From IMG/VR virus record IMGVR_UViG_3300046170_000519, positions 124,001 to 188,000 of that record: a DNA stretch of 64,000 nucleotides; one strand, given 5' to 3'. Positions 2,972 to 55,206 of the stretch are shown here, piece after piece. The position numbers were made by a program, and so were the translations under genes. Each line of letters begins with the position of its first letter. The stretch's first letter is position 1. The notes beneath the pieces are model-generated. The model did no database searches. It was given only the letters and a program-made list of their open reading frames with translations, and was not told the origin of the DNA.

Positions 2972-3217
2972 TCACACTCTTTTAAAAAGCTTAAAACTAA
3001 AAGATGTAAGCAAAACAATTAATAAAATAATCAAAAAATAAAAAATGGGATCAGAATAGTTTGGGAAAGAATTATTATTTAAAGCTTCAAGCTCAGATGA
3101 ACCTAAAGGAGCATTTGGAGTCTCTTGAGGAATGTTTGATTTTAATTTTGCTTTATTTAAAAAAGAATTGGTTTTAGCGCAACCTAAAAATAAAAAAGAT
3201 AAAAATATAAACCTCAT
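2972..3217 (-). CDS. small lipoprotein with C-terminal transmembrane helix (u-spanin-like topology)
   Basis: MRFIFLSFLFLGC lipobox-like signal; C-terminal hydrophobic FYFLIILLIVLLTSFSF followed by a basic tail; overlaps the stop of the upstream membrane gene. Confidence 0.55.
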   Translation of the reverse strand: MRFIFLSFLFLGCAKTNSFLNKAKLKSNIPQETPNAPLGSSELEALNNNSFPNYSDPIFYFLIILLIVLLTSFSFKLFKRV

Positions 3218-3651
3218 TACCTTCTTTTACTAGGAATGGCATAAAAACCAACAACCATGAAGCAAAGATCCATAAAAGATGCTAGCATTAAACCACCAGT
3301 CATTTTCACAATCTCCCAATCTTTAGCTCCAAAAATCCAGCCAAAAAAACCTAAACGAGAACTCTCTCCTTTGGGGACAATTAAATTGTATTCAATTTGA
3401 GGGTTAAAAGCATAATATATCATCAAAAAACACATTGTAAATGTGATTGACATAAACAAAATCCTTCTAGTAATTTTTACAAAAGGATCTTTAGCTTGTT
3501 CTGATTGACTCAAGATTAAAGCTTGCATCATTTTTTCATCTTTAATAGCTAACATCATTTGATCTTGACGCTTTTGTTCGAGCCAAGAGTTTAATAAATT
3601 GCATGCTAACTTAATCCCAGCTCCAACAATTGTATTTAAAACAGGTCCCAT
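3217..3651 (-). CDS. membrane protein, holin-like (3TM-holin-like layout)
   Basis: Amphipathic N-terminus, charged linker, then hydrophobic segments ILFMSITFTMCFLMIYYAF and GGLMLASFMDLCFMVVGFYAI, basic C-terminus SKRR. Confidence 0.5.
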   Translation of the reverse strand: MGPVLNTIVGAGIKLACNLLNSWLEQKRQDQMMLAIKDEKMMQALILSQSEQAKDPFVKITRRILFMSITFTMCFLMIYYAFNPQIEYNLIVPKGESSRLGFFGWIFGAKDWEIVKMTGGLMLASFMDLCFMVVGFYAIPSKRR

Positions 3652-4765: not shown

Positions 4766-5185
4766 TTAAATGTCTGAACTTCCGAAACCTTTTTCTCCTC
4801 GAACTGTATGTGTTAAATCATTTGTTTCACATAGAGTGACATGAGGAACTGGCATAAAGATTATTTGACAAATTCGATCCCCGATATTGTATCTTCTCGA
4901 AAGACTATTAGGCACACTCATTCTAACTTTTATCTCTCCTCTATAATTTGAATCAATAACACCTACAGAGTTTCTTAAATAGTGCTCAGTTTTAGAAACA
5001 CTAGAACGAGGAAATAATAAACCAACATAACCTTCGGGAATTTCAAAAGATAAGCCTGTGCCATACTCAAAGTATAAATCAGTTTCATCTAAAGAAATAG
5101 CCGTAAGGTCTAAACCTGCATCCCCTATTCTAGAATATTTTGGAGTGACGGCTTGAATCGAAAGTTTTTTAAAATTTATTTTCAT
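4766..5185 (-). CDS. dut: trimeric dUTPase
   Basis: Motifs GDAGLDL, PRSS, GVIDSNYRGEI, GDRICQ, RGEKGFGSS. Confidence 0.97.
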   Translation of the reverse strand: MKINFKKLSIQAVTPKYSRIGDAGLDLTAISLDETDLYFEYGTGLSFEIPEGYVGLLFPRSSVSKTEHYLRNSVGVIDSNYRGEIKVRMSVPNSLSRRYNIGDRICQIIFMPVPHVTLCETNDLTHTVRGEKGFGSSDI

Positions 5186-5191
5186 AAGCTA

Positions 5192-6205
5192 TTAAAAATC
5201 ATCTTCTAGAGATCCTGATTGTTGATACTCCCTAACTCTTCTTTCGAAAAAATTACCCATAGCTTGAACATCAACGACTTCCCCTAGCCAAGGAAATGGA
5301 TTATGATCGCTGGGAAAACGATAATCTAAACCTATAGCTTCTAATCTTCTGTTACCTATATAATGCATATAATCAACAAACATTTCAGCATTTAGACCCA
5401 AAATTCCTGTTGGTAAAACATCATGAGCATAAGATATTTCTAGCTCGACAGCTTTTTTTATGTGATCGATAAATTCTTGCTGAATATCTTTGGTCCAAAT
5501 AGAAGGATTTTGTTCGATTAATGTATTAATTAAATATGTACCAAAAGCTATATGAGAACTTTCATCCCTTAAAGTATACTTTATCTGATCAGAAATTCCT
5601 TGGAGTTTATTTTGACGACCAAGAGCTAAAAGCATGGCAAAGCCACTAAAGAAAAAAGTTCCTTCGCAAACAATCCAATATGTTAAAAAATTTCTTAATA
5701 TTTCTTGCTTCCCTTCTTTGTTGTGAGGGTTGAAGTCTTGACGACTAATGTCGTTAGTTATGCTCATTAAGAAATCATCTTTTGCTTTAATACTTGGAAT
5801 GTTTTCATAAGCAGCAAACACTTCTTCAATATTAAGATCAAGGCTATCACATATATATACTACCGTAAGATTGTGAAGACTTTCTTCAAAAGCTTGACGC
5901 AAAATGTACTGACGACACTCAGCATCAGTAATAAATCTAAAAGCCGAAAGAAGAAGGTTATTACCAACCAAAGACTCTGATCCAGCAAAAAACCCCAAAC
6001 AGCGTTTAACGAGCAATTTTTCATCATCTGTAATTTCATTATTTTTCCATTGTTTTATGTCGTTCTGCATGCTAATTTCAGTAGGCATCCAGTTATTAGC
6101 ACAACTTTTTAAAAATAAATCCCAAGCATATTTATGTTTGTGGGGTAAAATTCTATTAACTCCTGCTATATTTTTTGTTAAAAGTTCTCCTGTTTTATTA
6201 TCCAT
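5192..6205 (-). CDS. nrdB: ribonucleotide reductase beta subunit (R2), class Ic-like
   Basis: NNWMPTEI, FFAGSES, QAFEESLH, CEGTFFFSGF, RDESSH, NFFERRVREYQ; Glu as first ligand and Val at the radical-Tyr position. Confidence 0.96.
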   Translation of the reverse strand: MDNKTGELLTKNIAGVNRILPHKHKYAWDLFLKSCANNWMPTEISMQNDIKQWKNNEITDDEKLLVKRCLGFFAGSESLVGNNLLLSAFRFITDAECRQYILRQAFEESLHNLTVVYICDSLDLNIEEVFAAYENIPSIKAKDDFLMSITNDISRQDFNPHNKEGKQEILRNFLTYWIVCEGTFFFSGFAMLLALGRQNKLQGISDQIKYTLRDESSHIAFGTYLINTLIEQNPSIWTKDIQQEFIDHIKKAVELEISYAHDVLPTGILGLNAEMFVDYMHYIGNRRLEAIGLDYRFPSDHNPFPWLGEVVDVQAMGNFFERRVREYQQSGSLEDDF

Positions 6206-6262: not shown

Positions 6263-9200
6263 TTATTTATATGTTTTTCCACATATATCTATAAATCCAT
6301 TTTTTGAATATTCTTCATGCTCTGGAGTTCCATATAATATATTTAATTCTCCATTCCATACTGTTAAATCTAAAGAATTGAAAACATTTCCAATTTTATT
6401 TGCAAGTCCATGACTATAAACTCCATCATTAAAGCCAGCAAAATGCAAACCACAACCTTTTAAGGAGTCGCCGTCTTTTTTCATTAATAGTGAGCCTGAG
6501 TCACCAGAATCTGAAAAATAAATATTTTCCCCCTTGCCTCTATAGTATAAACAATCAGTGAAAATAGCTTTATGTTGCATAGATGGAACAACTTTAATGG
6601 AGCCCGTAGAGGGATCTAGAATTCTATCACTACAATAGTAAACATAACCCATCCAAGAGTCAGAAATTATTGAAGGATGTTCAGTAAAAGAGTTTTCAGT
6701 GGTAGAGCCCGTCGTCCTACCGCTTTTAAACACAAAATCTCCAACTTTTGCATCTGAGAATGATGGGGTATTATTAGTTAAATCAATAATCGAACTAGAG
6801 GGGAAAACACTTGCGCCAAAATTTATTGATGCAGCATCTACTGTATTAATTGGTTGAAAGCCATGGTTTCCATAGGAAGTTTTATTAAAAGGATGTGGAA
6901 AAAACAAAGGTTCGATATAATTTGTAGATCCAATATTTACCGATCCTGCTCCAAGGACAGTGTTTTGATCTAGAAAAGACGGACTAGAGATTTCTAAATC
7001 TAAAAGATTTTTATGAAAATCAGAAAGAGTGCCAGAATGATATTCAGAGTCTCCATTACCTCGTTCATCCGTAGAGCAACAAAAAGGGACTCCAAAAAAT
7101 AAAACATTTAAAGGTTGATTACTTGGCTTGGAACTCCAAGAAGTGTAATATATTTTTTTAAAAGTTTCATCAGAGGTTTGATAAGAAAATTCCATATACT
7201 CATCAGACATTAATATTGGATAAAAGCGAAAACTATTATTTTTAGATTTGCCATTTTTATATATGAGTGTGCCGTCATTTTTAAAAATAGAAACATTCGT
7301 CTCGACCTTGGAATATATAGAAGTTAAATTGCTTAAATCACTGTAAGTTAAACAAAAAGGTGAAGAATCTAGATTTAAACCCTTAAAAATATACTTCCTA
7401 CCAGCTTCAATAAAAGCAAAATCAGAATTGTCAAAAGCTGGATTTTTAAAAGAATCTCCAGAAATATCTTCAAAAATAAACCCGTTTTCATAAGATACAT
7501 TATAAGATATAGGAGGTTCTGTTTTTGGATCATAAACTTGAGAGCCGATAACATGGTTGTTAGTAACACAAACAAGCTCTTGGTCTTTATTGAGAGCGGA
7601 AAAACCTAAAGTTCCTGCAGAATAATCATTCGCCACCCCAATTGATACTCCTCCAGGAATGCACTTGTAGGGTTTTTTGTCAGAGTCGTAGGAATTTTGA
7701 GGGCAGCCATGAATTGATTTTTTTGAGGGAGATAGGCCATTAACTTTTTCGCCGCATGCGCCAAAAGCAAACATCTTAGGGACTTCTACGACATCTGTTT
7801 TAAAACCCTCTATCGAAGAGGGTATCAAATCTTCCTTCTTCAGTAAACTTTTTCCAACTTTTTTTGAAACCCCTACAGCAATACATTCTTGATGAGAATC
7901 TACACCATCTATAATTTTTGTAGAGACAAAAACACTTTCTACATTATTTTTTTGTAAAAGAAATTGAGTTGACGAAAAATTCATAGCTTGAGAGATATTT
8001 TTAAAATTATTTGAAGAGTTGAAATCGGAACTTGATGAAGATTCTAAAAGAAAAGAATTGCAGGATTCACAATCAATAAAGCCATCATAATAAGAAAGAT
8101 CGAAAGAATCTTGACATAGCTGGGCATAAGTTAAACGTTTGAGTCCACCCATGTAGCCATGGTTAAAACAATTATAGCTAACTGTATCAATGTCACCTTT
8201 TACATTTAAAGTAATATTTCCATAAAAATGTTCAATATTTAACCCGTCCACAACTTTGGTTCCCGCACTGTTTGAGCCAGTGACTTCAAGCACACTCGAA
8301 TCAGCCACAAATCCTAGAGCATGGATTTGGGGGACATTTTCAATTATATAAGTGCCTAAACCAATTCCAATAAATGAATGATTGTCATAATCAACTCCAT
8401 TAAATATAATTCGACTTGAACCATCAATACTAAAAGTATTGTTACCTTTCGATGATGGAATCAAGCATTGGACATATTGACCAGTAGATCTAAAACATTT
8501 ATCATTGTAGATAATAGAATCAGAAGATTCTGGTATCACAATTTTCTCTAAAGTTTTTCCTGTCGGTCTGGGAGGGCAGAGAGAACAATCATCAAAATTT
8601 TCGAAATCGCAATTTTCACCAGAAGATGTTGGAGTAATTGATAGAGTTGGGGGGATGCAATGATTGCAATTAATCGTATCGTCAAGAGAAGTTTGTGAAG
8701 GAGTTATAGGGATAATTAAACCAAAACTAGGAGTTATAGTTGGGAGAGGTAAAAAGTAAGGGCTTTTTGTTTTTGTATGAGTGAATGATCCTGTTTCAGT
8801 TTGCGTATAGGTTGCTGATTGAGTTTTAGTGAATGAACCTGTTTCGGTTATAGTATAAGAACCTGTTTCGGTTTGAGTTTCGGTCTCAGTCTGAGTCTGA
8901 GTCTCTGTTTGAGTCTGAGTACCAGTTTCTGTTTGGGTCTGAGTACCAGTTTCTGTTTGGGTCTGAGTACCAGTTTCTGTTTGAGTCTCCGTAGGTGTCG
9001 GATTCTCTATTATCGTTGCTGTAGGGGGCTGTGTGTTAGTTAAACTCGGAACTGGCTGTGTGTTAGTTGAACTCGGAACTGTTTGAGTGGGAGGAAGTTC
9101 TACCCTGTCAGTAAATGGAGCAGTCTCCGTAGGTGTCCCACGAAGAGGATTCTCTGTCTTTGTTCCTGTCTCAGTTCGAACTGTTAATGTCGGAGTATTC

Positions 9201-12200
9201 GTCTGAGTCTCTGTCTCAGTCTCCGTCTCCGTCTCGGTCTCAGTCTCGGTCCCCGTCTTTGTCGCACTAAAAGTATTTGTTTGAGAATTTGTTTGCGTTG
9301 GAGTATAAGCTGTATTCGAAGGGGTTGCATCAGGCGTTTCTGTTGGGCATAAACCATCTGGACAAGTCTCATGCCCACAACACAAGCCATCAACGGAAGA
9401 GCAACGATAATCACAAAAACCAGCACAATCTCCTAAGTCACAAAGAGATGTACTTGATCTAGATTCTCCCTGAGGAAGATTATAGTAACAAGTCCAAAAA
9501 TCCCCTGGATTATCATGCCATTTATATGGACCTTCGCTGCATGGATTAGTATCATTTCTCTCGTAGACACTTTGAGCATTGCATGGATCTTCCCCATTAG
9601 CTCGCCTTGGCAGTTGACTGTTGTCAAGACCTTGGTAATCCATGTAATAACAACCTTGAGGTGGACCTGAGCATGTATAATCCCCTTCTGGGTCAGAATC
9701 ATTTGGGCAAGTTAGACACTTGGTACGCATGCTTCCATAAGAGACATCACAAGGATCATCACAACATTGACTTCTAAAGCATTGATCTAAATGATAAAGA
9801 GTACATTTTCTACAACGATCTCTGTAATAACACTCAGTAATTTTTAATGTAACACCTGATCTGTTGGTATATTCTTCTAAAAGATCTGGAAAATCAGGAT
9901 CAATAACTTCTCCGTAATTACAAGCTCTACCAAAAGGTAATCCACCGTCTTCATTTGGAATTCCATTAGGAGCTGTATCCCAGCATCTTTTTGGGGTTTT
10001 TGTAGGAGTATCAGGAATTGTTTTTGTTTTTGTTTCTGTAAATGGACCTGTGATTGTCCCTGTAGTTGTCTGGCTATCTGTATCTGTATCAGTTTCTGTA
10101 TCAGTTTCTGTATCAGTTCCTGTGTTAGTTTTTGATGGGGTTTTAGTTTTTGTTGGGGTTTTTGGTTTTGTAGAAGTTCCTGAGTAAGTAAATGAATATG
10201 TTTCAGTATTTGTGGCAGTAGCAGTTTCAGAAAAAGTAGGAGTTGAGCTATCAGAAGCAGTATCACTTTCTGGAGCTGTTGCAGTTTCTGGAACACTATC
10301 ACTCGGTGGACTGTCAGTTGCACATTCGACTCCACAACAACTCTCTTCACAATCATAATGTAATTGTGGATGAGTTGAGCCTTTAGGCAATTCAGCACCA
10401 CATGGAATTTCAGGAGGCAAATTGAAGCATGAATCCCCTAATTTAGTACACCATTTTTCATTGTATATACAAGTATCTTTTGAGCATTCACAACCCGCTT
10501 CTTCTACAGTCGCATCTCTACACTCAGCAAGAAATAAACATTCAGGCTTGTAGTTAGAAGCGCAAGGGTCATTACAGCATTTAGTGGGTGATGCTGTGAT
10601 TGTGGGTGTTGATGTATGTGAACCCGTCTCTGTGATCGTATTAGAAAATGTATAAGTTTCCGAAGTTGTGATCGTATTAGAAAATGTATAAGTTTCCGAA
10701 GTCGTATCTGTATAGGTTTCTGTACCTGTTTCTGTGTACGTTACTGTTCCTGAGTAACTAGGTGTTGGGGTCGCTTCACAGTCATCACAATCACTATATG
10801 TATTTGATTCTTGTATCGCAGCTAATAATCCATCGGGTGGCGAATCTACTGGAGCACTACCACAAGTTAATGCATCGTTGTAGCTAACATATATACAGCA
10901 ATCTCCAAGTTTATAAACTCCCGTTTGAAGTATAGAAGGAAGGCAAAAATTAGAGCTTTCAATTATATAAGGATTGTCACAGCCGTAGTAACAAGGATAA
11001 AAATCATGAACATAACCAGTACTTGTTTCTGTGGGAGTAGATGTATGTGAGGCTGTGCTTGAGTAAGTTTTTGTATATGAAGCTGTATATGTTTGCGAAG
11101 ATGAACTCGTATGCGATGAAGTATAAGTATCAGTTGCCGAACCTGTTTCAGTAAAGGTAGATGTTGGGCATTTTGCATCATTTTCACATTTTTCACAACA
11201 ACATTCACAAGAATACGTGCCACAATTGTCAGCATCTGAATAAAGAGGTAAATTACTTCCAGGAGTATAAAGATAACAGCCCGAACAATTACATGTTTCA
11301 GTGTAGCTGGTAGTGATTGTAGCAGTTCTTGTTAAGGTGTTTGTTTGGGTCTGTGTCTGAGTTTGTGTCTGAGTCTGTGTCTTAGTTGGTGTCTGAGTTT
11401 TTGTCTTAGTTTGTGTTTTTGTACTAGTCTGGGTTTTGGTTTTAGTTGCTGTTTTTGACGGTGTTTCTGTTGGCGGTAAAGATGGAGTTCTGGTGGGGCA
11501 TACGCAATCACCATTATTTAAACCAGCTCCATTTGTTGCTCCAGAGTTATTAGTAGCACAATTTTGTTGATCTACACAAACCCAGTCCAGACATGTTGAT
11601 CCATCAGGAGCTAAACCTCCACCTTCTCTAGTGTAATCATCATTGTTGGATTTTATTTTATATCCAAGACTTTCTCCTGTGCAGCGATCAAAGAATTCAA
11701 GACATCCTGTCTCACATGGACAGCAATGATCGCAATGATGATTGTTGTTATCGCAATCTGTTTGAGTGCATTCCTGTAATGTAGCCGCAGAGCGACAGAA
11801 AGTATTTGTGTAGGTAGGAGTGAAACTTTGAGTTTTAGTAAATGAGCCTGTTTCTGTTTTGGTGTTTGTAAAGGATCCTGTTTCTGTTGTAGTCTGAGTC
11901 TGAGTTTCGGTTTGTGTTTTTGTGCGTGTTTGTGTGTCTGTTTCAGTAAAGGTAGATGTTGGGCATTTTGCATCATTTTCACATTTTTCACAACAACATT
12001 CACAAGAATACGTGCCACAATTGTCAGCATCTGAATAAAGAGGTAAATTACTTCCAGGAGTATAAAGATAACAGCCCGAACAATTACATGTTTCAGTGTA
12101 GCTGGTAGTGATTGTAGCAGTTTGTGTTAAGGTGTTTGTGCTTGTTAAAGTTTCGGTTCTCGTTTGTGTGAAAGATCCTGTTTCTGTTTGAGTAAAAGAA

Positions 12201-15200
12201 CCTGTTTCTGTTTGAGTTTGTGTTTTAGATGGGGTTTTAGTTCGAATCGTTTTCGTAGGTGATGGTGGCAACGATGGAGTTCTGGTGGGGCATACGCAAT
12301 CACCATTATTTAAACCAGCTCCATTTGTTGCTCCAGAGTTATTAGTAGCACAATTTTGTTGATCTACACAAACCCAGTCCAAGCATGTTGATCCATCAGG
12401 AGCTAAACCTCCACCTTCTATGGTATAGTCATCATTGTTGGATTTTATTTTATATCCAAGACTTTCTCCTGTGCAGCGATCAAAGAATTCAAGACATCCA
12501 CTCTCACATGGACAGCAATGATCGCAATGATGATTGTTGTTATCGCAATCCGTGGAGTTGCATTCTTGACCAGTAGAAGCATCAAGACAGCGAGTGTCTG
12601 TATAAGTGAATGTAGTTGTTTCAGTTTCTGTGTTTGTTTTTGTAGGAGTAAGCTTTGTTTTTGTTGTTGTACTTGTTTTTGTGGGTGTAAACTTTGTTTC
12701 TGTTTCTGTGTTTGTTTTTGTAGGAGTAAGCTTTGTTTCTGTAGGACTAAGCTTTGTTTCTGTAGGAGTAGGAGTAAACTTTGTTTCTGTTTCTGTGTTT
12801 GTTTTTGTAGGAGTAAGCTTTGTTTCTGTAGGAGTAGGAGTAAACTTTGTTTCTGTTTCTGTGTTTGTTTTTGTAGGAGTAAGCTTTGTTTCTGTAGGAG
12901 TAGGAGTAAACTTTGTTTCTGTTTCTGTGTTTGTTTTTGTAGGAGTAAGCTTTGTTTCTGTAGGAGTAGGAGTAAACTTTGTTTCAGTTTCTGTGTTTGT
13001 TTTTGTAGGAGTAAGCTTTGTTTCTGTAGGAGTAAGTTTTGTTCCTGTAGGAGTAGGAGTGAGTTTCGTTTTTGTTGCTGTGCTTGTTTTTGTAGGTGTA
13101 AGGATTGTTCCTGTAGGACTTGCTTTTGTCTGAGTTGGTGTCGCTACAGTAGGTGTTAAACAAACACCATTTATGTCAAGATGGCAATCGTCACTTATTA
13201 CTCCACCTGGGGCATTAGCTATATCATTGAAGGTACAACCTTCTGGAGGTATACAAACAGCTGGTTGATTAAATGTTCCAGCAAAACATGGGTGAGCTGA
13301 AATCGTAGGATCTGTATTACAAAATCCTGATACAGTACAAGGGCATTCACAACCACTATTAGGTTCGTCGCAATATATACAATCTATATACTCGCATGTT
13401 CCTGCATAATTTTGACCTGGATTACTAAAGTTACAAGCCATAGGATCATGGCAAACACCTGTTGGCGTAATTGTTTTTGTCGGAGTACCTTTTGTTTGTG
13501 TCGGACTTAGTTTTGTTTCAGTGGATGTTGAGGTTAATGGAGGTGTTGATGTTAGTGTTTTTGGCAACGATGGGGTTCTGGTGGGGCATACGCAATCACC
13601 GTTATTTAAACCAGCTCCATTTGTTACTCCAGAGTTATTAGTAGCACAATTTTGTTGATCTACACAAACCCAGTCCAAGCATGTTGATCCATCAGGAGCT
13701 AAACCTCCACCTTCTATGGTATAGTCATCATTGTTGGATTTTATTTTATATCCAAGACTTTCTCCTGTGCAGCGATCAAAGAATTCAAGACATCCACTCT
13801 CACATGGACAGCAATGATTGCAATGATGGTTATTATTCTGGCAATCTATGAAAGTGCATTCTTGCAATGTAGCAGCAGAACGACAGAAGGTATTTGTATA
13901 AGTGGGTGTTTTAGTCTCAGTATTTGTTTGAGTTTGTGTTGCTGTTTGCGTCTGAGTTTTTGTTGCTGTTTTTGTTTGTGTACTAGTTTGAGTTTTTGTA
14001 CTTGTTTTTGTTGGAGTTCTTTCTGTTTCAGTGAAGGTGGATGTTGGGCATTTTGCATCATTTTCACATTTTTGACAACAACATTGACAATCGTAGGAAC
14101 CGCAATTGTCGGCATCTGAGAAAAGAGGAAAGGCACTACCAGAACTAGAAAGGTAACAACCCGAACAATTACATGTTTCAGTGTAGCTGGTAGTAATTGT
14201 AGCAGTTCTTGTTAAGGTTTCTGTGTTAGTTAAAGTTTCTGTGTTAGTTAAAGTTTCTGTATTGCTCGGAGTTTCTGAAGGGGTTTTAGTAGGTGTTGAG
14301 GTTAATGGAGGTGTTAGTGTTGGTGTTTTTGGTAAAGATGGAGTATTGGTTGGACATGTGCAAGAGCCATTATTTAAACCAGCCCCATTTGTTGTTCCAG
14401 AGCTATTGGTAACACAATTTTGTTGATCTACACAAACCCAGTCCAAGCATGTTGATCCATCATTGCCTGAACCTCCACCTTCTATGGTATAGTCATCATT
14501 GTTGGATTTTATTTTATATCCAAGACTTTCTCCTGTGCAGCGATCAAAGAATTCAAGACATCCACTCTCACATGGACAGCAATGATCGCAATGATGGTTA
14601 TTATTCTGGCAATCTATGACAGTGCATGTTTGACCAGTAGAGGCATCAACACAAGGAGTCTCTGTTTTAGTTGGACTGCTCGTTTCAGTTTGCACGGTTT
14701 CTGTAGGAGCAGTATTACTTGAAGTAGGCTCAATAGTATTTGAAGGTGTAGCTACTGTAGCGGTTGGGCAGGGAAGATTGCAGTAAATCTCTACATGGCA
14801 TAGAGCGTCACGGTCATAATTACAATCCAATGGATCCATGCAAGCACCTTTGTTAATACAAAGATTGGTATCATGACACCATCCAGGTTGTGAACCAAAT
14901 ACGCTCGCTCTAGGATCATACTCACAATATTGAGCGTAACCACATGCATACTCACAACTAGGAGTTGGTGTTAAATCTGGAGTGTTTGTGTATGTATGAA
15001 CCGTATCTGTATGAACCGTATCTGTATGAACCGTATCTGTATGAACCGTATCTGTATGAACCGTATCTGTATGAACCGTATCTGTATAAGCTGTATTTGA
15101 AGGAGTCAACCTCGTTCCTGTGGGAGTAAGCTTTGTTCCTGTAGGAGTAGGAGTGAGCTTTGTTCCTGTAGCAGTTACAACCGTATCTGTATGAGCTGTA

Positions 15201-18200
15201 TCTGTATGAACCGTATCTGTATGAACCGTATCTGTATGAACCGTATCTGTATGAACCGTATCTGTATGAACCGTATCTGTATAAGCTGTATTTGAAGGAG
15301 TCAACCTCGTTCCTGTGGGAGTAAGCTTTGTTCCTGTAGGAGTAGGAGTGAGCTTTGTTCCTGTAGCAGTTACAACCGTATCTGTATGAGCTGTATCTGT
15401 ATGAGCGGTATCTGAATGCGGTGTATCTGAATGCGGTGTATCTGAATGCGGTGTATCTGATGGATTAGGGCTATATGTAGGAAGAGGACTATCGGTAGGA
15501 AGAGGGCTATCGGTTCGGCAGCTAATATATTCACAACTTCCATCGTCACAATTTGCCCAAGAGCTATAATTGCAAGCCGATTGATCTGTGCAACCTTTAT
15601 TTCTAAGACCGCTACAAAGATCTGGGTCATGGCAACCCGCATCTGGATCGAAGCTACAATCTGCAGCAGATTTACAACCAAAATTTCCTGAACAACAACC
15701 ATCACATTGACAATCAGCATCAGGATCATAATTACAATAGCCTGGATTTTGACAACCAATAACACCTTGACCGCAGTTACCCTGAGAATCTTTACAGCAA
15801 ATATTGTCTAAACGACCTCCAGAACAACATTCGCTTTCATCATGACAAACTCCTGTTGGATCTCCTGTATAAAAAAGGCAATCGTTTTGATTTAAACACG
15901 CGAATTGAATGCAGTAAGTTGGGGATAAAGTTGGAGTTTTGTCTGGAGAAGGTGAGCTTGTTAAAGTTAACGGAGGTGTGTTAGTGTTTGTTGGACAAAT
16001 AGTACCAATGCAGAGATTTTCTAAATGACATATCGCAGATCTATCATAATTGCAATCCCCTAATGTTTGGCATCCCCCGCTATGACCGCTACATAAAGTA
16101 TTGTCAGCGCATTTTGTTGGGTCATCATCATAATAGCAATCGGTCGCTATCTTACAAACATAACCTTCGCAACAAGGAGCTTCAGCAGGACCAGTTCTGT
16201 GTTTACAGCATGTTGTAAGATCATCACAATCTGAACCATCAAAAGCTGGATCAAAAGGATCTGGGCAGCCGTAAAGATAACATGTTTCAGTATTTGTTAC
16301 TGGCGGAGTCTCTGTTTCTGTAGCAGGTGGGGTTTGTGTTGGAATAGTCGCTGTAGGAACAGGGACAGTATCTGTTGGGCAAGGTTGACAACCCCCAGTT
16401 AAGCAAGCTACATTACTATTTCCAAGATGATTTAAACACTCATTGCTAGGCGAAATGACATCATTGCATGCAAACTGTGGATGCCTAGCAGCTAAGGCAC
16501 CATTAGGACACCAACAGTATTCGTTAGTCTTGGCACAATCTTTTGGTGGGGTAGCTCCGTAATTAACATCACAAGGGTCATCACAACTGCAGGTAGAATC
16601 ATTTCTTTTAAATTCTGGATCCCCTATTTCTCGACATACACCGCAAGCATCAATGTAGTAGCATTTATCGTTTTGAACCCCTGTAGAGGTAAAACTACAA
16701 CTATGAGATGTATCTGGACAAGGCTGAAAAGTAGCTTCAACGCCAGTACCCGCTCCATAAACATAAGGGTCATCACAATCAGGAACACATGTTCTTGATG
16801 GAGTAACAGGTGGAGATGGAGTGTCTGCAGTAGGGCTGATTGTGTTTGTAACAGCAGGTGTGTCTGTTGGGCAAAGCTCTGGTTGAGGTGGACATCTACC
16901 CTCGCAATCAGGCTCTCCTTCGCATTTATCAGCATCCATTTTACACGCTGTTGGGTCGTAGTTACAATCACCTTGCAATAAACATCCCCCTTCCCTACCT
17001 GAGCAAAGGGAATCAGTGTCGCAACCTCTGTTCGGATCGAAATTACAATCTTTAGGATCTGGGCAACCTCTGTAAGTTCCTGAACATTTACTTGGATCAC
17101 TGCAAGGAGCATTAGGGTTAAAGTTACAATCATTAGCGTCTTTACAATCGCATTGATTTGGGCAATCCGAGCAAGATAAACTATATCCAGCTTGATAATT
17201 ATCAAAATTAGGTGGACCATAATTTTGGCCTGTCCATCGAGTTTCACAAAAACAACCCACATATGAAACAGCAAGTTCACAAGTTCCGTCTCCTAGAGCT
17301 GTAATTCCAGTAACTCCAGTAGTATAAATTCTTGGACCCGTAGACTGTCCTGTAATCGTATCGCAAGTGTAAACCGCTATACAAGGACCTGCTGTACATG
17401 TCTGAGTTTCTGTTCCACTATTTGTAGAGGTATCTGTATGAGCCGTATCTGTATGAGCCGTATCTGTATGAGCCGTATCTGTATGAGCCGTATCTGTATG
17501 AGCCGTATCTGTATGAGCCGTATCTGTATGAGCCGTATCTGTATGAGCCGTATCTGTATGAGCCGTATCTGTATGAGCCGTATCTGTATGAGCCGTATCT
17601 GTATGAGCCGTATCTGTATGAGCCGTATCTGTATGAGCCGTATCTGTATGAGCCGTATCTGTATGAGCCGTATCTGTATGAGCTGTATCTGTATGAGCTG
17701 TATCTGTATGAGCCGTATCTGTATGAGCCGTATCTGTATGAGCCGTATCTGTATGAGCCGTATCTGTATGAGCCGTATCTGTATGAGCCGTATCTGTATG
17801 AGCCGTATCTGTATGAGCTGTATCTGTATGAGCTGTATCTGTATGAGCCGTATCTGTGTAAACTAATGTTGGTGTAAGTGGAGGAGAATAGGTAGAAGTA
17901 TTACAATCGTATTCACATCCATCGACGCAGCTCGCTGATAAAGACATATCTTTATTAGTTTCATAATTGCAAGCATTAGGATCATTACACACGTCATTTT
18001 GACTACAAAGAGCGAGATTAACACAAGCTGGAGCTATTCCATCTTGAAAATCTGCAGAGCAGTAAGAAGTACTACCCGAAAGGTCATCGCCGCATGCATA
18101 ATCTTCACAACTACATTGAAATCCGTCATCGATTGTAGCATCAGGGTCATAATTTCCATAAGACCCATCATATAAAACATCCATGCAACCTAGTATTCCT

Positions 18201-20078: not shown

Positions 20079-23000
20079 TTAGTTCGTACAGTTGTATAAA
20101 ATTTCGTAATTAAAAGTTGTGGAATAAATAGTCGTTAAACCATTTGTTGTAGTTATGGTATTTTCGCTGTAAGAAATAGAGGTTTCAATCAAATAAGATT
20201 CGATACCATCTCTAGATCCACATAAGTTTATAACATCTTTTTCTGTTGGAGCCCTAGGATCTAAGCTGGGATGTTGAGAAGAACTCTGTTGTGTATTGCT
20301 GATTTCGAATGTACTATAATTAGAGGAAGATGGATCTAATACAGGAATAGCTTTAGGAACATTAAGAACATTATGGTGGCAAGGAGAATCTTGAACGCAA
20401 TCACTACATTTCGAATCATTCAAGCAAGCTGTAATTGAAACTTTATGATAACCATCTTTTTCAAAATCTATAGTATAATACTCTAAATTGAAATCAGAAG
20501 TTGATGTTGGCGTTGATTCATGATGCGGTAATTCTATATTAAAATTATATTTTTCATAATTATTAGATTTTACTTCTTTTATTAAATTAGATGTATTATT
20601 TTCATATACTTTTATATCCGCTTCATCAATGGCATTTAAATCTCCATCATGAAATAATCCGTAGTAGTAACTTTTATCTTCTACGTCCATAGTTCCATCA
20701 CAAATACTGCAAGCTTCGGAATTAGAAAGGATTGGTAATAAATCAGTAAAGTGATATTGATTATTATAATCTTTTCCAAAAAATCTTACATGTAAAGAAG
20801 CTTGAGAATAAGGTATAAATGCTGCAGCTCCTCGATTCGCCGCAACTTTTAATAGTCGAGGATATGATATATCAGTTGAAGTATGCTGTAATACTCCGTT
20901 AAAAGCTGGCGAACCATACACTCTAAATGGATTTGAATTATTAACAAAAACGATTAAACCTGGATTTCCTCCAGCATTAATGCATATAACATTACTGATT
21001 GAGACTCCTTGAAGAGGAGAATCACACTCAACATACATTTCTAAAGGTAATTCTTCTGATGGAGTTGGGGTATGAGTGTCTGTGTCTGTTAATGTAGTAG
21101 TCGGAGTTTCACAAGAAACACAGCATTGATCGCAAGAATCTTGTGGGTAAACATCATTAGCTTTAGGAGTATCAGTTGAATCTGCAGGAATAACTTTATT
21201 AATTAATAAATTATTGTTAAATTCCTGAGAATTTTTGAATTGACCTGCAGAACCTCCACAAGAAGAAGCTGAAACCGCATTACAGAAAGAAACATCAACT
21301 TGAGAGTCAAATACATAACATTTAGAGGTTGAGAAATCTTTAATAACACTTGGGAAATCAGCATAAGATTCAACTCCTATATAAGCTGGTAATGTAGCAG
21401 AAAGGCAGTTGCTAGGCTCAGAACCATCTCCACAGGTGTATGAGCAACTAATATACTTACCGCAGAGTCCAAAGCCACAAGTCTCAGTTTCAGTTTGAGT
21501 CTGAGTTTCTGTCTCTGTTGCTGTTTGAGTCTGAGTTTCTGTCTCTGTTGCTGTTTGAGTCTGAGTTTCTGTCTCTGTTGCTGTCTGAGTCTGAGTTCTT
21601 GTTTGAGTGTTTGTAGCTGTCTGGGTCTCAACCTCTGTTTCTGTCTCTGTCTCGGTTTGAGTGTTTGTTGATGTCTCGGTCTGAGTTCGTGTTTGAGTCT
21701 TTGTTACTGTCTGGGTCTCAGTCTCTGTTTCAGTCTCTGTCTCGGTCTGAGTTTGTGTTTGAGTCTTTGTTGCTGTCTGGGTCTCAGTCTCTGTTTCAGT
21801 CTCTGTCTCGGTCTGAGTTTGTGTTTTAGTCTGAGTCTGAGTTTCTGTCTCGGTCTGAGTTTGTGTTTGAGTCTTTGTTGCTGTCTGGGTCTCAGTCTCT
21901 GTTTCAGTCTCTGTCTCGGTCTGAGTTTGTGTTTCAGTCTGAGTCTGAGTTTCTGTCTCGGTCTGAGTTCGTGTTTGAGTCTTTGTTGCTGTCTGGGTCT
22001 CAGTCTCTGTTTCAGTCTCTGCCTCGGTCTGAGTTTGTGTTTCAGTCTGAGTTTGTGTTTCAGTCTGAGTCTGAGTTTCTGTCTCGGTCTGAGTTCGTGT
22101 TTGAGTCTTTGTTGCTGTCTGGGTCTCAGTCTCTGTTTCAGTCTCTGTCTCGGTCTGAGTTTGTGTTTCAGTCTGAGTCTGAGTTTCTGTCTCGGTCTGA
22201 GTTCGTGTTTGAGTCTTTGTTGCTGTCTGGGTCTCAGTCTCTGTTTCAGTCTCTGTCTCGGTCTGAGTTTGTGTTTCAGTCTGAGTCTGAGTTTCTGTCT
22301 CGGTCTGAGTCTGAGTTTCTGTCTCGGTCTGAGTCTGAGTTTCTGTCTCGGTCTGAGTCTGAGTTTGTGTTTCTGTCTCGGTCTGAGTCTGAGTTTGTGT
22401 TTCTGTCTCGGTCTGAGTCTGAGTTTCTGTCTCGGTCTGAGTCTGAGTTTGTGTTTCAGTCTGAGTTTGTGTTTCTGTCTCGGTCTGAGTTTGTGTTTCT
22501 GTCTCGGTCTGAGTCTGAGTTTCTGTCTCGGTCTGAGTCTGAGTTTGTGTTTCAGTCTGAGTCTGAGTTTGTGTTTCAGTCTGAGTCTGAGTTTGTGTTT
22601 CAGTCTGAGTCTGAGTTTGTGTTTCAGTCTGAGTCTGAGTTTCAGTAAAGGTATTTGTTTCAGTCTGAGTCTCTGTTTCAGTCTCTGTCTCGGTCTGAGT
22701 TTGTGTTTCAGTAAAGGTATTTGTTTCAGTCTGAGTCTGAGTTTCTGTCTCGGTCTGAGTCTGGGTTTCTGTCTCGGTCTGAGTCTGAGTTTCTGTTTCA
22801 GTCTGAGTCTGAGTTTGTGTTTCAGTCTGAGTCTGAGTTTCTGTTTCAGTCTGAGTCTGAGTTTCTGTTTCAGTCTGAGTCTGAGTTTCAGTAAAGGTAT
22901 TTGTTTCAGTCTGAGTCTGAGTTTCTGTCTCGGTCTGAGTCTGAGTTTGTGTTTCAGTCTGAGTCTGAGTTTCTGTCTCGGTCTGAGTCTGAGTTTGTGT

Positions 23001-48906: not shown

Positions 48907-49839
48907 TTACTCTCTAAGGTCTGCTGATGATTTATTACTCAAATACCAGTTTATTGTTTGCTCAAGACCTTCCTCAAAAGAAATGGGATGAAAGTCTGGG
49001 AAAATAATTTTCATTTTTGAGACATCTAACACTTTTCTTTGTACTCCATTTGGTTTTGATGTATCCCATTTCAAATCTCCTTTGTATTTTATAAATTTAG
49101 CAGTTAAATCAGCAAGTTCTTTGATTGATGTCCCAATACCTGTCCCGATGTTTACAGGATCTAGATCGTGATCAACATTTACAGACATAGAAATAACCTT
49201 GGCAGCATCCTTAACGTGTAAAAATTCTCTAACAGGACTTCCATCACCCCAATTAGTAATTTCGGGTTCATTTATTTGATCAGAAAACCTTTTTATTAAA
49301 GCTGATACTACATGAGCTCGATATTCTTGAAATACATCGTGTTCTCCGTATAAGTTAGTAAGCACTAGGTGGTTTCCTAATAATCCATATTGTTGATAAT
49401 AAGATTTTTGAGCTATTAATTGAATTTTTTTTGAAGAGCCGTAGCCGATAACAGAATCGTGCATGGGGCCATTCCAAAAATCTTTTTCTTTCATATCTCC
49501 TTCGACGTGACCTGGGTAAGCACAGGCAGAACCTACAGCAACAACTTTATTAACATCGTTTTTTGCCGCAGCCTCATAAATATTAGCTGTCATTAAAGTG
49601 TTATTCCTGAAGAGGTTAGCGGGCTCTTCGACATTAATGTTTAATCCGCCATAATATGCAGCCGAATGAATTATGACTTCTGGCTTATGTTTTTTAATAT
49701 AATTAAAAGTTGAATTATAATCATAAAGATTAAACTCAGAGCTTCTTGGAGCAAGGACTTCGAATTTTTTTTCGCACTCGCTAACGATTTGCCTCCCCAG
49801 AAAACCTGAACCGCCTGTAACTAATATTTTTTTATACAT
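48907..49839 (-). CDS. fcl: GDP-L-fucose synthase-like extended SDR
   Basis: TGGSGFLG, HSAAYYGGL, GSACAYP, YGSSK, NLYG, WGDGSPVREFLHVKD, DTSKPNG. Confidence 0.85.
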   Translation of the reverse strand: MYKKILVTGGSGFLGRQIVSECEKKFEVLAPRSSEFNLYDYNSTFNYIKKHKPEVIIHSAAYYGGLNINVEEPANLFRNNTLMTANIYEAAAKNDVNKVVAVGSACAYPGHVEGDMKEKDFWNGPMHDSVIGYGSSKKIQLIAQKSYYQQYGLLGNHLVLTNLYGEHDVFQEYRAHVVSALIKRFSDQINEPEITNWGDGSPVREFLHVKDAAKVISMSVNVDHDLDPVNIGTGIGTSIKELADLTAKFIKYKGDLKWDTSKPNGVQRKVLDVSKMKIIFPDFHPISFEEGLEQTINWYLSNKSSADLRE

Positions 49840-52752: not shown

Positions 52753-55206
52753 TTACTGGCAGCTTTCACAAGATTCTCCTTTAGCTCTAGCCTCTAGGCT
52801 ACAAGATTTAGGTTCAGATTTAGATTCACCTGTGGATTTTTCTACTTTACTAGCAGCTCTATTGCGTAAATAATATGTAGTTTTAAGTCCTAACTGCCAA
52901 CACTTAAAGTAAATATCATTTAAATATTTTAAGGATGTTGTTTTGTTATAAAGGTTAAAACTTATAGCTTGATCAACCCACTTTTGACGAACAGAATTGA
53001 TTTCTATTAATTTTAACATGTCTCTATCAAATGCAGTTTTATACTTATTTTTTAAATCTTCTGGAATATTTTCGTTAGTTAGAGATAAATCACCATCAAT
53101 GCTTTTTATGAATGAAGCTATTTCTGGATTCCAGAGACCTCTATCTTTCATATCATTGACAAAATGAGGATTAGTGATGTAGAAATTACCACTTTTATTT
53201 TCATAAACAAAAAGAACAGAAAAATTAGGTTCAATACTTTGCTCCACACCATTTATATATCCTATGGTTGCGGTTGGAGCTATAGCCATTACATTTGAAT
53301 TTCTCATACCATGCTTAGAAATATGACTCCTAACTTTTTCCCAATCTTTTAGATTTTCTGTAGATTTGTTTTTTTCTCCCCTGTATGACATTAAATTATT
53401 GAAAGAGTCAATAGGTAGAATATTTTTACTCCACAGTGATCCATTATAACTACTATAAGATCCTTTTTCTCTAGCTAAAAGGGAGCTGGCATAAATTGCA
53501 TGACAGGAATAAAACTCAAAAAGTTTGTCGTTAAAACTCTTAGCTTCATCGCTGTCAATTTGAATATTCATTTTATGTAAAACATCGTGTATTGACATCA
53601 TTCCTAGGCCAATTGGTCTATGCTTTAAGTTGCTATTTTCAGCTTCTTTTGTTGGGTAGAAATTTAGATCAATTACATTATCAAGTATTCTAATAGCTGT
53701 ATGTATTGTTGATTTTAATTTATTAAAATCGATGCAATAACCAGTTTTGCCATGAGTTGTTTTTTCTTTTAAATGATTTAATATATTGATAGAACCTAAA
53801 TTGCAAACAGCTGTTTCTCCTATTTCTGTTTTTTCTCCCTGATTGTATTTTGATGGTTTTGTGTGTAGAGTAATTTCCGTGCAAAGATTTGAGCTATTGA
53901 CCGCACCCTTATGTTGATTAGTGTATCGAATATTACAGGGGTCTTTAAATGTATTCCATGGGTGAGATGTTTCAAAGAGAACTTTAAGCATTTTTTTCCA
54001 AAGATCTTTTGCGGGGATTATCCGATAATTTTTAATTAAACCTGCATCTGCCGCTTTGCATAACTCATCGTATCGAGTGTCAAACTGATCTCCGAAAAGA
54101 TCATGCAAGGTTTTTCCGTCATCACCTTCTGTATCTTTTGGGTCAAAGAAATACCAAACATCTTCTTTTTGGACCCTACGCATAAATTCATCAGGAATCC
54201 ATGCTGCGGTATTCATGTCGTGACAGCGTAAGCGGTCGTCTCCTGTATTTCTCCTTAAGTTTAAAAAATCTTCAAAATCTAAATGCCATGGCTCTAAATA
54301 AGCACATCCAGCACCTGGGCGCTTCCCTCCTTGATTGACAGCAACTAAAAGGTCGTTGTATATTTTCAACCAAGGAACTAAACCGCTAGAAATACCATTA
54401 GTCCCTTCAATATGAGAACCTGTAGAACGAAATGGTGTTACATCAAGACCTAAGCCTCCAGCATATTTTGATTTGCGAGCTTCTTGCCAAGCACCGTCAA
54501 ATATCCCATCAATACTATCATCAAAAGTATTTAAGTAGCAGGAACTAAGTTGAGAGTGAGTGGTTCCGCTATTAAAAAGAGTTGGGGTTGAGGGAGTGTA
54601 CAAGAATTGACTAAACAAATTGTAAAATTCTATAGCTTTTTCGTTTTTATTTTTTTCGTTGATTGCTAGTCCCATTGCGACTCGCATCCAAAAACTTTGG
54701 GGAGCCTCCATGCATTTTTCATCCACCCTAATAAAATATCTGTCTGTTAAAATCTGTATACCTAAATATTTAAAATCTAAATCTCTTCTAATTTTAATAG
54801 ATTCAGCAAGCTTTTGTAAGTCGAAGTTTAGTAATTTTTCATCAAGCCTGTTTTCTTTTACTAGCTTTTTTGTATTTTGAATGAAACTTTTTCTATATTG
54901 TAATTTAAAAGTGTCTGAATCCACACCTTCTTTAAAAACTTCTTTATATAGATTATTTAATAATAATCTAGCCGCAGCAAAAGAGTAATTAGGCTCTTTT
55001 TCTATTTTTTCTCTAGCTGATAAAATCAAAGCTTGATCGATCTCTTTTGTTGTTATTTTGTCAAAAAGCTGTAATTGTGCATCTAGAACTATTTCGCTGG
55101 CAGATACATCGGTAATTCCTTCACAAGCTCTTTGCGAGCTTGCATTAATTTTATCTACATGAAATTTTTCAAGCCTTCCGTTTCTTTTCTTTACTTTTAT
55201 ATTCAT
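52753..55206 (-). CDS. nrdA: ribonucleotide reductase alpha subunit with N-terminal ATP cone
   Basis: VKKRNG ATP cone, TPTLFNSG, SSCY, SNLCTEI, APTAT, KTTYYLR, C-terminal CESCQ. Confidence 0.97.
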   Translation of the reverse strand: MNIKVKKRNGRLEKFHVDKINASSQRACEGITDVSASEIVLDAQLQLFDKITTKEIDQALILSAREKIEKEPNYSFAAARLLLNNLYKEVFKEGVDSDTFKLQYRKSFIQNTKKLVKENRLDEKLLNFDLQKLAESIKIRRDLDFKYLGIQILTDRYFIRVDEKCMEAPQSFWMRVAMGLAINEKNKNEKAIEFYNLFSQFLYTPSTPTLFNSGTTHSQLSSCYLNTFDDSIDGIFDGAWQEARKSKYAGGLGLDVTPFRSTGSHIEGTNGISSGLVPWLKIYNDLLVAVNQGGKRPGAGCAYLEPWHLDFEDFLNLRRNTGDDRLRCHDMNTAAWIPDEFMRRVQKEDVWYFFDPKDTEGDDGKTLHDLFGDQFDTRYDELCKAADAGLIKNYRIIPAKDLWKKMLKVLFETSHPWNTFKDPCNIRYTNQHKGAVNSSNLCTEITLHTKPSKYNQGEKTEIGETAVCNLGSINILNHLKEKTTHGKTGYCIDFNKLKSTIHTAIRILDNVIDLNFYPTKEAENSNLKHRPIGLGMMSIHDVLHKMNIQIDSDEAKSFNDKLFEFYSCHAIYASSLLAREKGSYSSYNGSLWSKNILPIDSFNNLMSYRGEKNKSTENLKDWEKVRSHISKHGMRNSNVMAIAPTATIGYINGVEQSIEPNFSVLFVYENKSGNFYITNPHFVNDMKDRGLWNPEIASFIKSIDGDLSLTNENIPEDLKNKYKTAFDRDMLKLIEINSVRQKWVDQAISFNLYNKTTSLKYLNDIYFKCWQLGLKTTYYLRNRAASKVEKSTGESKSEPKSCSLEARAKGESCESCQ

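What the first reader, a model, noticed from the sequence alone, without database searches (positions are those of the whole stretch)
5192..6205. Phage NrdB has the class Ic (Mn/Fe, no tyrosyl radical) signature
Seen: the first metal ligand is Glu (GSESLV, codon 5975-5977). The residue four after the ligand His in EESLHNLTV is Val (5861-5863), not Tyr. The C-terminal relay Tyr (RRVREYQ) is kept. Known: E. coli class Ia has D84 and Y122 (ETIHSRSY), whereas Chlamydia class Ic R2 has Glu and Phe at these positions and uses a Mn(IV)/Fe(III) cofactor that tolerates H2O2/NO. Inference: a phage-borne radical-less, oxidant-resistant RNR, pointing to a PVC-type (e.g. Verrucomicrobia) host or gene donor.
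Basis: partly seen in the sequence, partly recalled or inferred. Interest (0 to 1): 0.7.

Follow-up and report, generated by a model that had tools for sequence, protein, structure and literature searches.

The report
Tyrosine-less phage ribonucleotide reductase subunit
A large marine phage carries a working-looking small subunit of ribonucleotide reductase that has no radical tyrosine (valine instead); it belongs to a mostly viral sister group of the chlamydial Mn/Fe enzymes that a 2026 preprint has already flagged, and it does not come from chlamydia-like bacteria.

Summary
The ORF at 5192..6205 (-) is a 337-aa NrdB. It has Glu77 as first metal ligand, Val115 at the E. coli Y122 / Chlamydia F127 position, all six ligands, and the relay residues W39 and Y327. 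Its best solved relatives are C. trachomatis Mn/Fe R2c structures (E 2.6e-111; model TM 0.86-0.90).

The gene is under strong purifying selection (dN/dS about 0.03). It is the only beta subunit in a 206-kb tailed-phage genome, which also has one intact NrdA and a thioredoxin.

- The protein is not in the chlamydial/PVC R2c clade. It sits in a separate, well-supported clade with the signature E77-N112-[V/I]115-T211.
- T211 replaces the pocket isoleucine (E. coli I234).
- The clade is mostly marine viral. It also includes the chromosomes of eight small-genome alphaproteobacterial species.
- An AU test rejects joining it to the PVC clade (p 0.018).

A February 2026 preprint already describes this viral "subclass Ic-like" group with Ile/Val.

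The most likely mechanism is a metal-centred oxidant with no tyrosyl radical, probably Mn(IV)/Fe(III). The metal is untested.

The parts
5192..6205 (-). nrdB, class I ribonucleotide reductase beta subunit, 337 aa, with no tyrosine at the radical site
   Evidence: AF2 model with pLDDT 84.8 matches C. trachomatis NrdB at TM 0.86-0.90 and rmsd 1.4 A
5975..5977 (-). codon 77, Glu, first metal ligand (E. coli D84, Chlamydia E89)
5873..5884 (-). codons 108-111, E-S-L-H: ligands Glu108 and His111 (E. coli E115/H118)
5870..5872 (-). codon 112, Asn. It is present in essentially all members of the V/I clade examined here, where chlamydial-type R2c and NrdBz class Ia have Thr
5861..5863 (-). codon 115, Val (GTA), at the radical-tyrosine position (E. 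coli Y122, Chlamydia F127)
   Evidence: Val or Ile in all close relatives
5663..5665 (-). codon 181, Glu ligand (E. coli E204). F185 and F189 follow, equivalent to pocket residues F208 and F212
5573..5575 (-). codon 211, Thr, at the position of E. coli I234, the third residue of the hydrophobic pocket around Y122
   Evidence: the pocket is described in PMC7615503
5552..5563 (-). codons 215-218, E-S-S-H: ligands Glu215 and His218 (E. coli E238/H241)
6089..6091 (-). codon 39, Trp of the electron-transfer path (E. coli W48, Chlamydia W51)
5225..5227 (-). codon 327, C-terminal relay Tyr (E. coli Y356, Chlamydia Y338)
52753..55206 (-). nrdA, the only alpha subunit in the genome, 817 aa. It has one ATP-cone, the NLCTE catalytic motif, the TTYYLR tyrosine pair and a C-terminal CESC
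4766..5185 (-). dUTPase, directly downstream of nrdB (nucleotide-metabolism neighbour)

Best explanation
The gene encodes the working beta subunit of the phage's only ribonucleotide reductase. It has the full six-residue dimetal site with Glu as first ligand, but Val where class Ia/Ib enzymes keep the radical tyrosine. The oxidising equivalent therefore cannot be stored on that residue. It must be held on the metal cluster, as in class Ic, where Mn(IV)/Fe(III) has Mn in site 1 next to this position. From the cluster the hole would travel by way of W39 and the C-terminal Y327 to the Tyr-Tyr pair and catalytic Cys of the phage NrdA, with a phage thioredoxin available for re-reduction. Shown: the residues, the fold, selection, a single alpha and a single beta, and clade membership. 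Inferred: the metal-centred oxidant (strongly) and its Mn/Fe identity (by analogy only). The protein belongs to a distinct, mostly viral 'Ic-like' lineage with signature E77-N112-[V/I]115-T211. This lineage is not the chlamydial R2c lineage.
For: The first and second metal spheres, E/E/H/E/E/H plus E107 and D214, equal the NrdBzc (Ic) pattern in Table 4 of PMC6370689. The best solved relatives are chlamydial Mn/Fe NrdB and S. erythraea R2c, by sequence (E 2.6e-111) and by fold. No conserved new Tyr or Trp appears in the clade that could serve as another radical site. dN/dS is about 0.03 against 56 related viral genes. The genome holds one PF00268 match and one PF02867 match. NrdA is intact. 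A thioredoxin is present and NrdI is absent. V/I clade monophyly is supported at 100/95* and 99/91*. The same type is the sole NrdB found in alphaproteobacterial genomes G001 and G002, so it evidently supports cellular DNA synthesis. PMC12918982 reports the same Ile/Val viral clade and finds its abundance anti-correlated with modelled iron.
Against: No member of the V/I clade has been characterised biochemically. The clade is phylogenetically separate from the only enzymes proven to use Mn/Fe. The pocket differs from them at three positions: V/I for F, T for I, and N for T. Glu as first ligand also occurs in dimanganese class Id and in Glu+Tyr relatives. C. trachomatis R2c is itself prone to mismetallation (PMC8463856). 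No known sequence feature fixes the choice of metal.
Confidence: 0.65

Rival explanations
1. The scaffold is the same but the cofactor is different. It could be a homodinuclear cluster, either Mn(IV)/Mn(III) as in class Id or a high-valent diiron form, or some other arrangement made possible by the remodelled pocket (V/I115, T211, N112).
For: Class Id also has Glu as first ligand and a metal-centred oxidant. The V/I clade is separate from proven Mn/Fe enzymes. The preprint found no clear single-metal pattern and leaves the cofactor open.
Against: Similarity to class Id structures is weak (E about 1e-9, against 1e-111 to R2c). The second-sphere residues E107/D214 match the Ic pattern, not the Id pattern (C/S at that position). 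No NrdI is present.
Confidence: 0.2
2. This is a canonical class Ic gene captured from a PVC bacterium (Chlamydiae, Verrucomicrobia or Planctomycetes), and so marks a PVC host.
For: PVC genomes are prominent among cellular hits at 46-51% identity. The best solved structures are chlamydial.
Against: All those PVC proteins have Phe, Thr and Ile where the phage has Val, Asn and Thr. They form their own clade (100/99*) nested among Asp+Tyr NrdBz sequences, across a 98/95* branch from the phage clade. The AU test gives p 0.018. Asp+Tyr class Ia proteins of Legionella and others are just as similar (46-48%). Alphaproteobacterial genomes hold closer relatives for both beta (55-60%) and alpha (55%).
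Confidence: 0.05
3. The oxidant is stored on another residue or on a post-translationally made group, for example a modified residue as in class Ie, rather than on the metals.
For: Class Ie shows that R2 scaffolds can do this. Y117 and Y210 (Chlamydia Y129 and Y222) are conserved near the site.
Against: All six metal ligands are retained, unlike class Ie. Y117 and Y210 are equally conserved in Phe-type and Tyr-type relatives, so they are not a clade-specific replacement. No gained Tyr or Trp is conserved in the clade. No NrdI is present.
Confidence: 0.05
4. The protein is not a catalytic RNR subunit. It could be an R2lox-like oxidase or a degenerate or regulatory R2.
For: Ferritin-like R2 homologues without the Tyr include R2lox. 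There are weak NCBIfam R2lox hits.
Against: The R2lox models score far below their cut-offs (72 bits against 194), while the NrdB model passes (447 against 309). F185, which blocks the R2lox ligand channel, is kept. The C-terminal relay Tyr and tail are conserved. This is the only beta subunit to pair with an intact alpha. dN/dS is 0.03.
Confidence: 0.03

Closest known systems
Class Ic RNR beta subunit (R2c, RNRdb NrdBzc): C. trachomatis NrdB (1SYY, 4D8F, 4M1I) and S. erythraea R2c (6Y2N)
   Same: It has the same fold (TM 0.86-0.90, rmsd 1.4 A). Sequence identity is about 50%. The ligand set E/E/H/E/E/H with second-sphere E and D is identical. There is no Tyr at the radical site. W51, Y222 and Y338 equivalents are kept, as is F197.
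   Different: It has Val/Ile instead of Phe at the radical site, Thr instead of Ile at the pocket position (E. coli I234), and Asn instead of Thr after the ligand His. There are further clade-wide changes: A132 for M, L307 for M, and D335 for W in the alpha-binding tail. It forms a separate clade. The alpha subunit has one ATP-cone and 817 aa.
'Subclass Ic-like' viral RNR clade of GOV 2.0 (bioRxiv/PMC12918982, February 2026)
   Same: The viruses are marine. The alpha subunit is nearest to NrdAz but outside the reference clades. The beta subunit lacks the Tyr and has Ile or Val. None is biochemically characterised. The window's alpha also matches P. aeruginosa NrdA (NrdAz type) best.
   Different: Identity of this particular contig with that dataset could not be checked. 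The preprint reports alpha and beta as usually adjacent, whereas here they are 46.5 kb apart. In the passages read, the preprint mentions neither the Thr/Asn co-substitutions nor cellular (alphaproteobacterial) members.
Class Ia NrdBz (NrdBza) of Pseudomonas, Legionella and P. putida phages such as vB_PpuM-Peetri
   Same: They belong to the same NrdBz superfamily, at 42-48% identity. They share the alpha type, and these are the nearest hits among cultured phages.
   Different: They have Asp as first ligand and Tyr at the radical site, so they are ordinary diiron-tyrosyl enzymes.
Cyano SP / class O ferritin-like subunits of cyanopodoviruses
   Same: [quoted passage not shown]
   Different: They are a different, minimal lineage with a short C-terminus and a different second sphere (D, D). 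They are not close in sequence to this protein.

Membership tests
Class I RNR beta subunit (PF00268, ferritin-like R2) | R2 fold and family profile above the curated cut-off | tested here: met
   PF00268 at 255 bits against 33.6, and NF005550 at 447 against 309. The AF2 model matches R2 structures.
Class I RNR beta subunit (PF00268, ferritin-like R2) | Radical-transfer residues (Trp near site 1, C-terminal Tyr) and a cognate alpha subunit with the Tyr-Tyr pair and catalytic Cys | tested here: met
   W39 and Y327. NrdA has NLCTE, TTYYLR and a C-terminal CESC.
Class Ic (R2c / NrdBzc) | Glu instead of Asp as first metal ligand, with the other five ligands kept and second-sphere E and D | tested here: met
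   E77, E108, H111, E181, E215, H218, E107 and D214, compared with Table 4 of PMC6370689.
Class Ic (R2c / NrdBzc) | Non-oxidisable residue at the radical-Tyr site (the RNRdb rule is Phe, Leu or Val) | tested here: met
   V115; the rule is quoted. A later preprint treats Ile/Val as atypical.
Class Ic (R2c / NrdBzc) | Phylogenetic membership of the clade that holds the characterised Mn/Fe enzymes | tested here: not met
   It is a separate clade (99/91*) across a 98/95* branch. AU p is 0.018 against union with the chlamydial/PVC clade. Caveats: the root is at the midpoint, long branches are present, and the test group was named after the tree was seen.
Class Ic (R2c / NrdBzc) | Active Mn(IV)/Fe(III) cofactor with no tyrosyl radical | not testable with these tools
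   This needs reconstitution, EPR/Mossbauer and an activity assay.
Viral 'subclass Ic-like' clade (PMC12918982) | Marine viral origin, alpha subunit near NrdAz, beta subunit with Ile or Val at the Tyr site | tested here: met
   It is an IMG/VR phage record, with Tara and other marine homologues. The best solved match for alpha is P. aeruginosa NrdA. Val or Ile is present in all 200 close homologues.
Class Ia (NrdBza) | Asp as first ligand and Tyr at the radical site | tested here: not met
   E77 and V115.
Class Id (NrdBi) | Close sequence relationship to NrdBi, Tyr retained, Cys/Ser at second-sphere position 7 | tested here: not met
   Class Id structures match only at E about 1e-9. The query has V115 and E107.
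[quoted passage not shown] | R2lox profile above cut-off and an open ligand channel (Ala in place of R2c F197) | tested here: not met
   The R2lox models score 37-72 bits against cut-offs of 194-346. F185 is retained, and its role in the channel is described in PMC4118035.

The most novel reading that the evidence does not exclude
The E77-N112-[V/I]115-T211 clade is a separate class I subclass rather than a cosmetic variant of Ic. Replacing the aromatic residue with a small aliphatic one, together with Ile-to-Thr in the radical pocket, would create a polar or hydrated cavity next to metal site 1. That change could alter the cofactor (metal make-up, assembly oxidant or redox tuning). Large marine phages and a small-genome alphaproteobacterial lineage would use it as an iron-sparing or oxidant-tolerant way to make dNTPs.
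Probability: 0.2. Interest if true: 0.7.

Novelty: new variant of a known kind. Interest (0 to 1): 0.45.

Why it matters
Class Ic chemistry rests almost entirely on one chlamydial enzyme. This study examined several hundred sequences of a second lineage of tyrosine-less R2 proteins, abundant in marine phage genomes of about 200 kb and also chromosomal in some Alphaproteobacteria. The lineage has a differently built radical pocket. If it uses Mn/Fe, that would widen the known reach of that cofactor into ocean viruses and bear on iron economy during infection. If it uses something else, it would be a new subclass. Either outcome can be tested directly with recombinant protein. The finding also warns against reading host or donor taxonomy from an active-site signature alone.

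Tried and rejected
1. Complex prediction of NrdA with the NrdB C-terminal 40 residues returned 'no answer' (score 0.02). It is not evidence either way.
2. A 14-sequence alignment was too diverse for the genome scan. A 4-sequence alignment worked.
3. I tried to name the alphaproteobacterial order that carries the I/V type. Only 'Alphaproteobacteria bacterium' appears in two record titles.
4. Host inference from cultured phages failed. DNA polymerase, TerL and NrdA have no close cultured relative (under 33%, under 27% and under 48% identity).
5. Related phage contigs are binned in Cellvibrionales, Pseudomonadales and Woesebacteria MAGs. I treated this as mis-binning or at most a weak hint, not as host evidence.
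6. 'Acinetobacter phage MD-2021a', the top phage-database hit, lies in bacterial-looking context and is Asp+Tyr.
7. I looked for a compensating conserved Tyr or Trp in the clade and found none.
8. Merging HMM domains of intein-bearing homologues gave wrong residues at position 115. I therefore left proteins over 450 aa out of the trees and checked them by motif.
9. dS is near saturation (median 1.8), so the dN/dS value is rough, though clearly far below 1.

Full report
**The gene and its active-site residues**

The ORF at 5192..6205 on the minus strand encodes 337 aa. It is a class I ribonucleotide reductase small subunit. It matches Pfam PF00268 at E 9e-76 and NCBIfam NF005550 at 447 bits against a cut-off of 309. 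R2lox models score far below their cut-offs.

- GAG at 5975-5977 is Glu77.
- CAC at 5873-5875 is His111.
- GTA at 5861-5863 is Val115, four residues after His111.

The HMMER alignment to C. trachomatis R2c (1SYY, 2ANI, 4D8F; E 2.6e-111) has no gap across the site. It gives E77=E89, E108/H111=E120/H123, V115=F127, E181=E193, E215/H218=E227/H230, W39=W51 and Y327=Y338.

I fetched E. coli K-12 nrdB and aligned it. Every textbook residue fell on the expected column:

| E. coli | Query |
|---|---|
| W48 | W39 |
| D84 | E77 |
| E115 / H118 | E108 / H111 |
| Y122 | V115 |
| E204 | E181 |
| F208 / F212 | F185 / F189 |
| I234 | T211 |
| E238 / H241 | E215 / H218 |
| Y356 | Y327 |

An AlphaFold2 model (pLDDT 84.8) matches chlamydial Mn/Fe NrdB structures best (TM 0.86-0.90, rmsd 1.4 A), then S. 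erythraea R2c.

**Genome context**

The window is bases 124001-188000 of a 205,857-bp IMG/VR virus record. GC is 33.9%. It is a tailed phage, with a large terminase, RIIA, a DnaB-type helicase, a DnaE-type polymerase and a Clp/Lon-like ATPase. No cultured phage is a close relative.

The genome holds one beta and one alpha subunit. NrdA lies at 52753..55206 (-). It has one ATP-cone, the all-alpha and barrel domains, NLCTE, the TTYYLR tyrosine pair and a C-terminal CESC. Its best solved match is P. aeruginosa NrdA. A thioredoxin is present. No glutaredoxin or NrdI was found. A dUTPase follows nrdB directly.

**The gene is functional and the substitution is fixed**

The protein database holds 120 clusters at 79-96% identity, from marine metagenomes including Tara, on contigs of up to about 206 kb. 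IMG/VR holds 225 related loci.

At position 115 these have Val (75) or Ile (44) in the protein set, and Val (75) or Ile (5) in the viral loci. Glu77 and the other ligands are retained in essentially all; one row has a gap at ligand 108 and one has Ser at W39. The codons are GTA, GTT or GTG for Val and ATA or ATT for Ile. Pairwise dN/dS against 56 related genes has a median of 0.03, with dS near saturation.

**Phylogeny**

A genome scan returned 80 loci. A few phage contigs binned into MAGs came first. After them, every Glu-type cellular relative at 46-51% identity has Phe at the site. These come from Planctomycetota, Chlamydiota, Verrucomicrobiota, Lentisphaerota, Bdellovibrionota, Actinomycetota, Chloroflexota and some Gammaproteobacteria. 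Asp+Tyr class Ia proteins (Legionella, Allochromatium and others) are equally similar at 46-48%.

In an 82-row tree, made with positions 77 and 115 removed, the Val/Ile sequences form one clade (100/95*). The chlamydial/PVC Phe clade (100/99*) nests among Asp+Tyr sequences elsewhere. The Glu+Phe state needs at least four changes on starred branches.

A focused 53-row tree gives the same picture: the Val/Ile clade has 99/91* support, across a 98/95* branch from the rest. An AU test rejects a single clade of Val/Ile plus PVC-type sequences (p 0.018).

These trees carry caveats. The test group was named after the tree was seen. The root is at the midpoint. Several branches are long.

**Cellular members of the clade**

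Two Alphaproteobacteria MAG contigs (57-58% identity) carry cellular genes around nrdA-nrdB: yaaA, a deaminase, DinB, carbonic anhydrase and a SulP permease. Their GC is 51-56%.

I searched 121 genomes of the same GTDB order and found the type in eight species genomes of 1.3-2.2 Mb. One copy lies at 1.175 Mb on a large contig. Another lies in a 1.65-Mb chromosome flanked by ahpC, dsbD, uvrB and uvrC. It is the only NrdB found in G001 and G002.

This alphaproteobacterial group is a tight clade (100/100*) nested among viral and metagenomic sequences. The direction of transfer is unresolved. The phage NrdA is 55% identical to the alphaproteobacterial NrdA, so alpha and beta tell the same story.

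Searching with the alphaproteobacterial protein revealed a second large subclade, mostly Ile, 57-63% identical to the query. It lies on contigs of up to about 240 kb. One example has T4-like replication genes and fatty-acid oxidation genes. A deeper member, P0121, also lies in a phage-like nucleotide-metabolism module.

I compared 213 Val/Ile sequences with 53 cellular Glu+Phe and 22 Asp+Tyr sequences. The Val/Ile clade has clade-wide changes that also hold in its deep members (with single exceptions at 211):
- N112, where the others have Thr.
- A132, where the others have Met.
- T211, where the others have Ile.
- L307, where the others have Met.
- D335, where the others have Trp; this is in the alpha-binding tail.

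T211 is the equivalent of E. coli I234. Together with F208 and F212, I234 forms the conserved hydrophobic pocket around the tyrosyl oxygen (PMC7615503).

Across all sequences gathered, 342 carry E/[V or I]/N/T. Phe or Tyr at the site goes with Ile at position 211 in the main groups. A separate Glu+Leu lineage also has Thr there. The radical pocket has therefore been remodelled as a unit. No new conserved Tyr or Trp appears.

**Mechanism**

Without a tyrosine at the site, and with no substitute, the oxidant must be metal-centred. That is how class Ic works: Mn(IV)/Fe(III) with Mn in site 1 next to this position, able to assemble with O2 or H2O2 (PMC8463856).

The first- and second-sphere pattern matches NrdBzc exactly, and RNRdb's rule counts Val as Ic (PMC6370689). 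I therefore favour a Mn/Fe or closely related metal-centred oxidant, with radical transfer through W39 and Y327 to NrdA.

The choice of metal is an inference. No clade member has been characterised, and the pocket differs at three positions from the proven enzymes. Oxidant tolerance is a hypothesis even for Chlamydia. For ocean phages, iron sparing is at least as plausible, because the preprint finds the group anti-correlated with modelled iron.

**Prior art and novelty**

A February 2026 preprint (PMC12918982) reports 269 GOV 2.0 viral populations with an alpha clade next to NrdAz. Their beta subunits lack the Tyr and carry Ile or Val. The authors call this 'subclass Ic-like' and note that it is uncharacterised. 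The core observation is therefore already published.

What this analysis adds:
- Formal separation from the chlamydial clade.
- The N112/T211 co-substitutions.
- The chromosomal alphaproteobacterial members.
- The second viral subclade.

No cultured phage in the INPHARED set carries this type. The nearest ones, P. putida phages, are Asp+Tyr.

I rate it as a variant of a known kind, of moderate interest.

Noticed in passing
window 21,481-40,485: A tandem array of about 19 kb (periods 6/12/24/30/66) whose minus strand encodes (Thr-Glu / Thr-Gln)n. The ORF 40744->34139 (2201 aa) ends in a frame-shifted reading of the repeat, and other frames stay open for more than 1300 codons beyond it. This looks like one giant repeat-protein gene broken by frame shifts, which may be real or assembly errors. 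The long '+ strand ORFs' listed there are artefacts of a repeat without stop codons.
   Followed up: partly
window 6263-18409 (-): A 4048-aa ORF directly upstream of nrdB. It has an N-terminal LysM domain, about 40 TDTAH repeats, several repeated Cys-rich modules, Thr-rich linkers and a C-terminal GDSGS motif like that of trypsin-type proteases. Pfam finds no other match. Further giant ORFs (2980, 3302 and 1067 aa) lie outside the window.
   Followed up: partly
window 5192-55206; loci L026-L030, L076: nrdA and nrdB are 46.5 kb apart here, separated by the giant repeat genes and sugar-nucleotide enzymes. In 56 of 83 related loci nrdA lies about 2.4 kb upstream on the same strand. At DNA level mainly nrdB itself is conserved with those loci; a few also match the ORF at 3217..3651.
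   Followed up: partly
L181 (G001:C18), L182 (G002:C68), G013 chromosome: In the alphaproteobacterial genomes that carry the Ile/Val-type NrdB, the peroxide-stress gene yaaA sits one to three genes upstream of nrdA-nrdB. In G013, ahpC and dsbD follow. This may be a link to oxidative stress or iron handling.
   Followed up: no
proteins P0122, P0123, P0128, P0132, P0135, P0144, P0166, P0192: Many deeper relatives of the Val-type NrdB are about 580-680 aa and align as two stretches, so they appear to carry inteins inserted close to the E-x-x-H metal motif. The NrdA next to P0121 also carries an intein.
   Followed up: partly
L213 (context of P0356): This second marine phage group has an E/N/I/T-type NrdB. 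Beside gp32, UvsX-like and DnaB-like genes it carries a run of fatty-acid beta-oxidation genes (thiolase, enoyl-CoA hydratase/3-hydroxyacyl-CoA dehydrogenase, acyl-CoA dehydrogenase).
   Followed up: no
L089, L090, L091 (genome contigs): Whole or partial genomes of this phage group are binned inside MAGs labelled Cellvibrionales (a 210.8-kb contig), Pseudomonadales and Candidatus Woesebacteria. This is likely mis-binning, and at most a weak hint of a gammaproteobacterial host.
   Followed up: partly
window 48907-50764 and 55288-57040: A cluster of sugar-nucleotide enzymes flanks nrdA: two epimerase/dehydratase genes, a UDP-glucose/GDP-mannose dehydrogenase and another NAD-dependent epimerase. 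This suggests that the phage encodes glycan modification.
   Followed up: no
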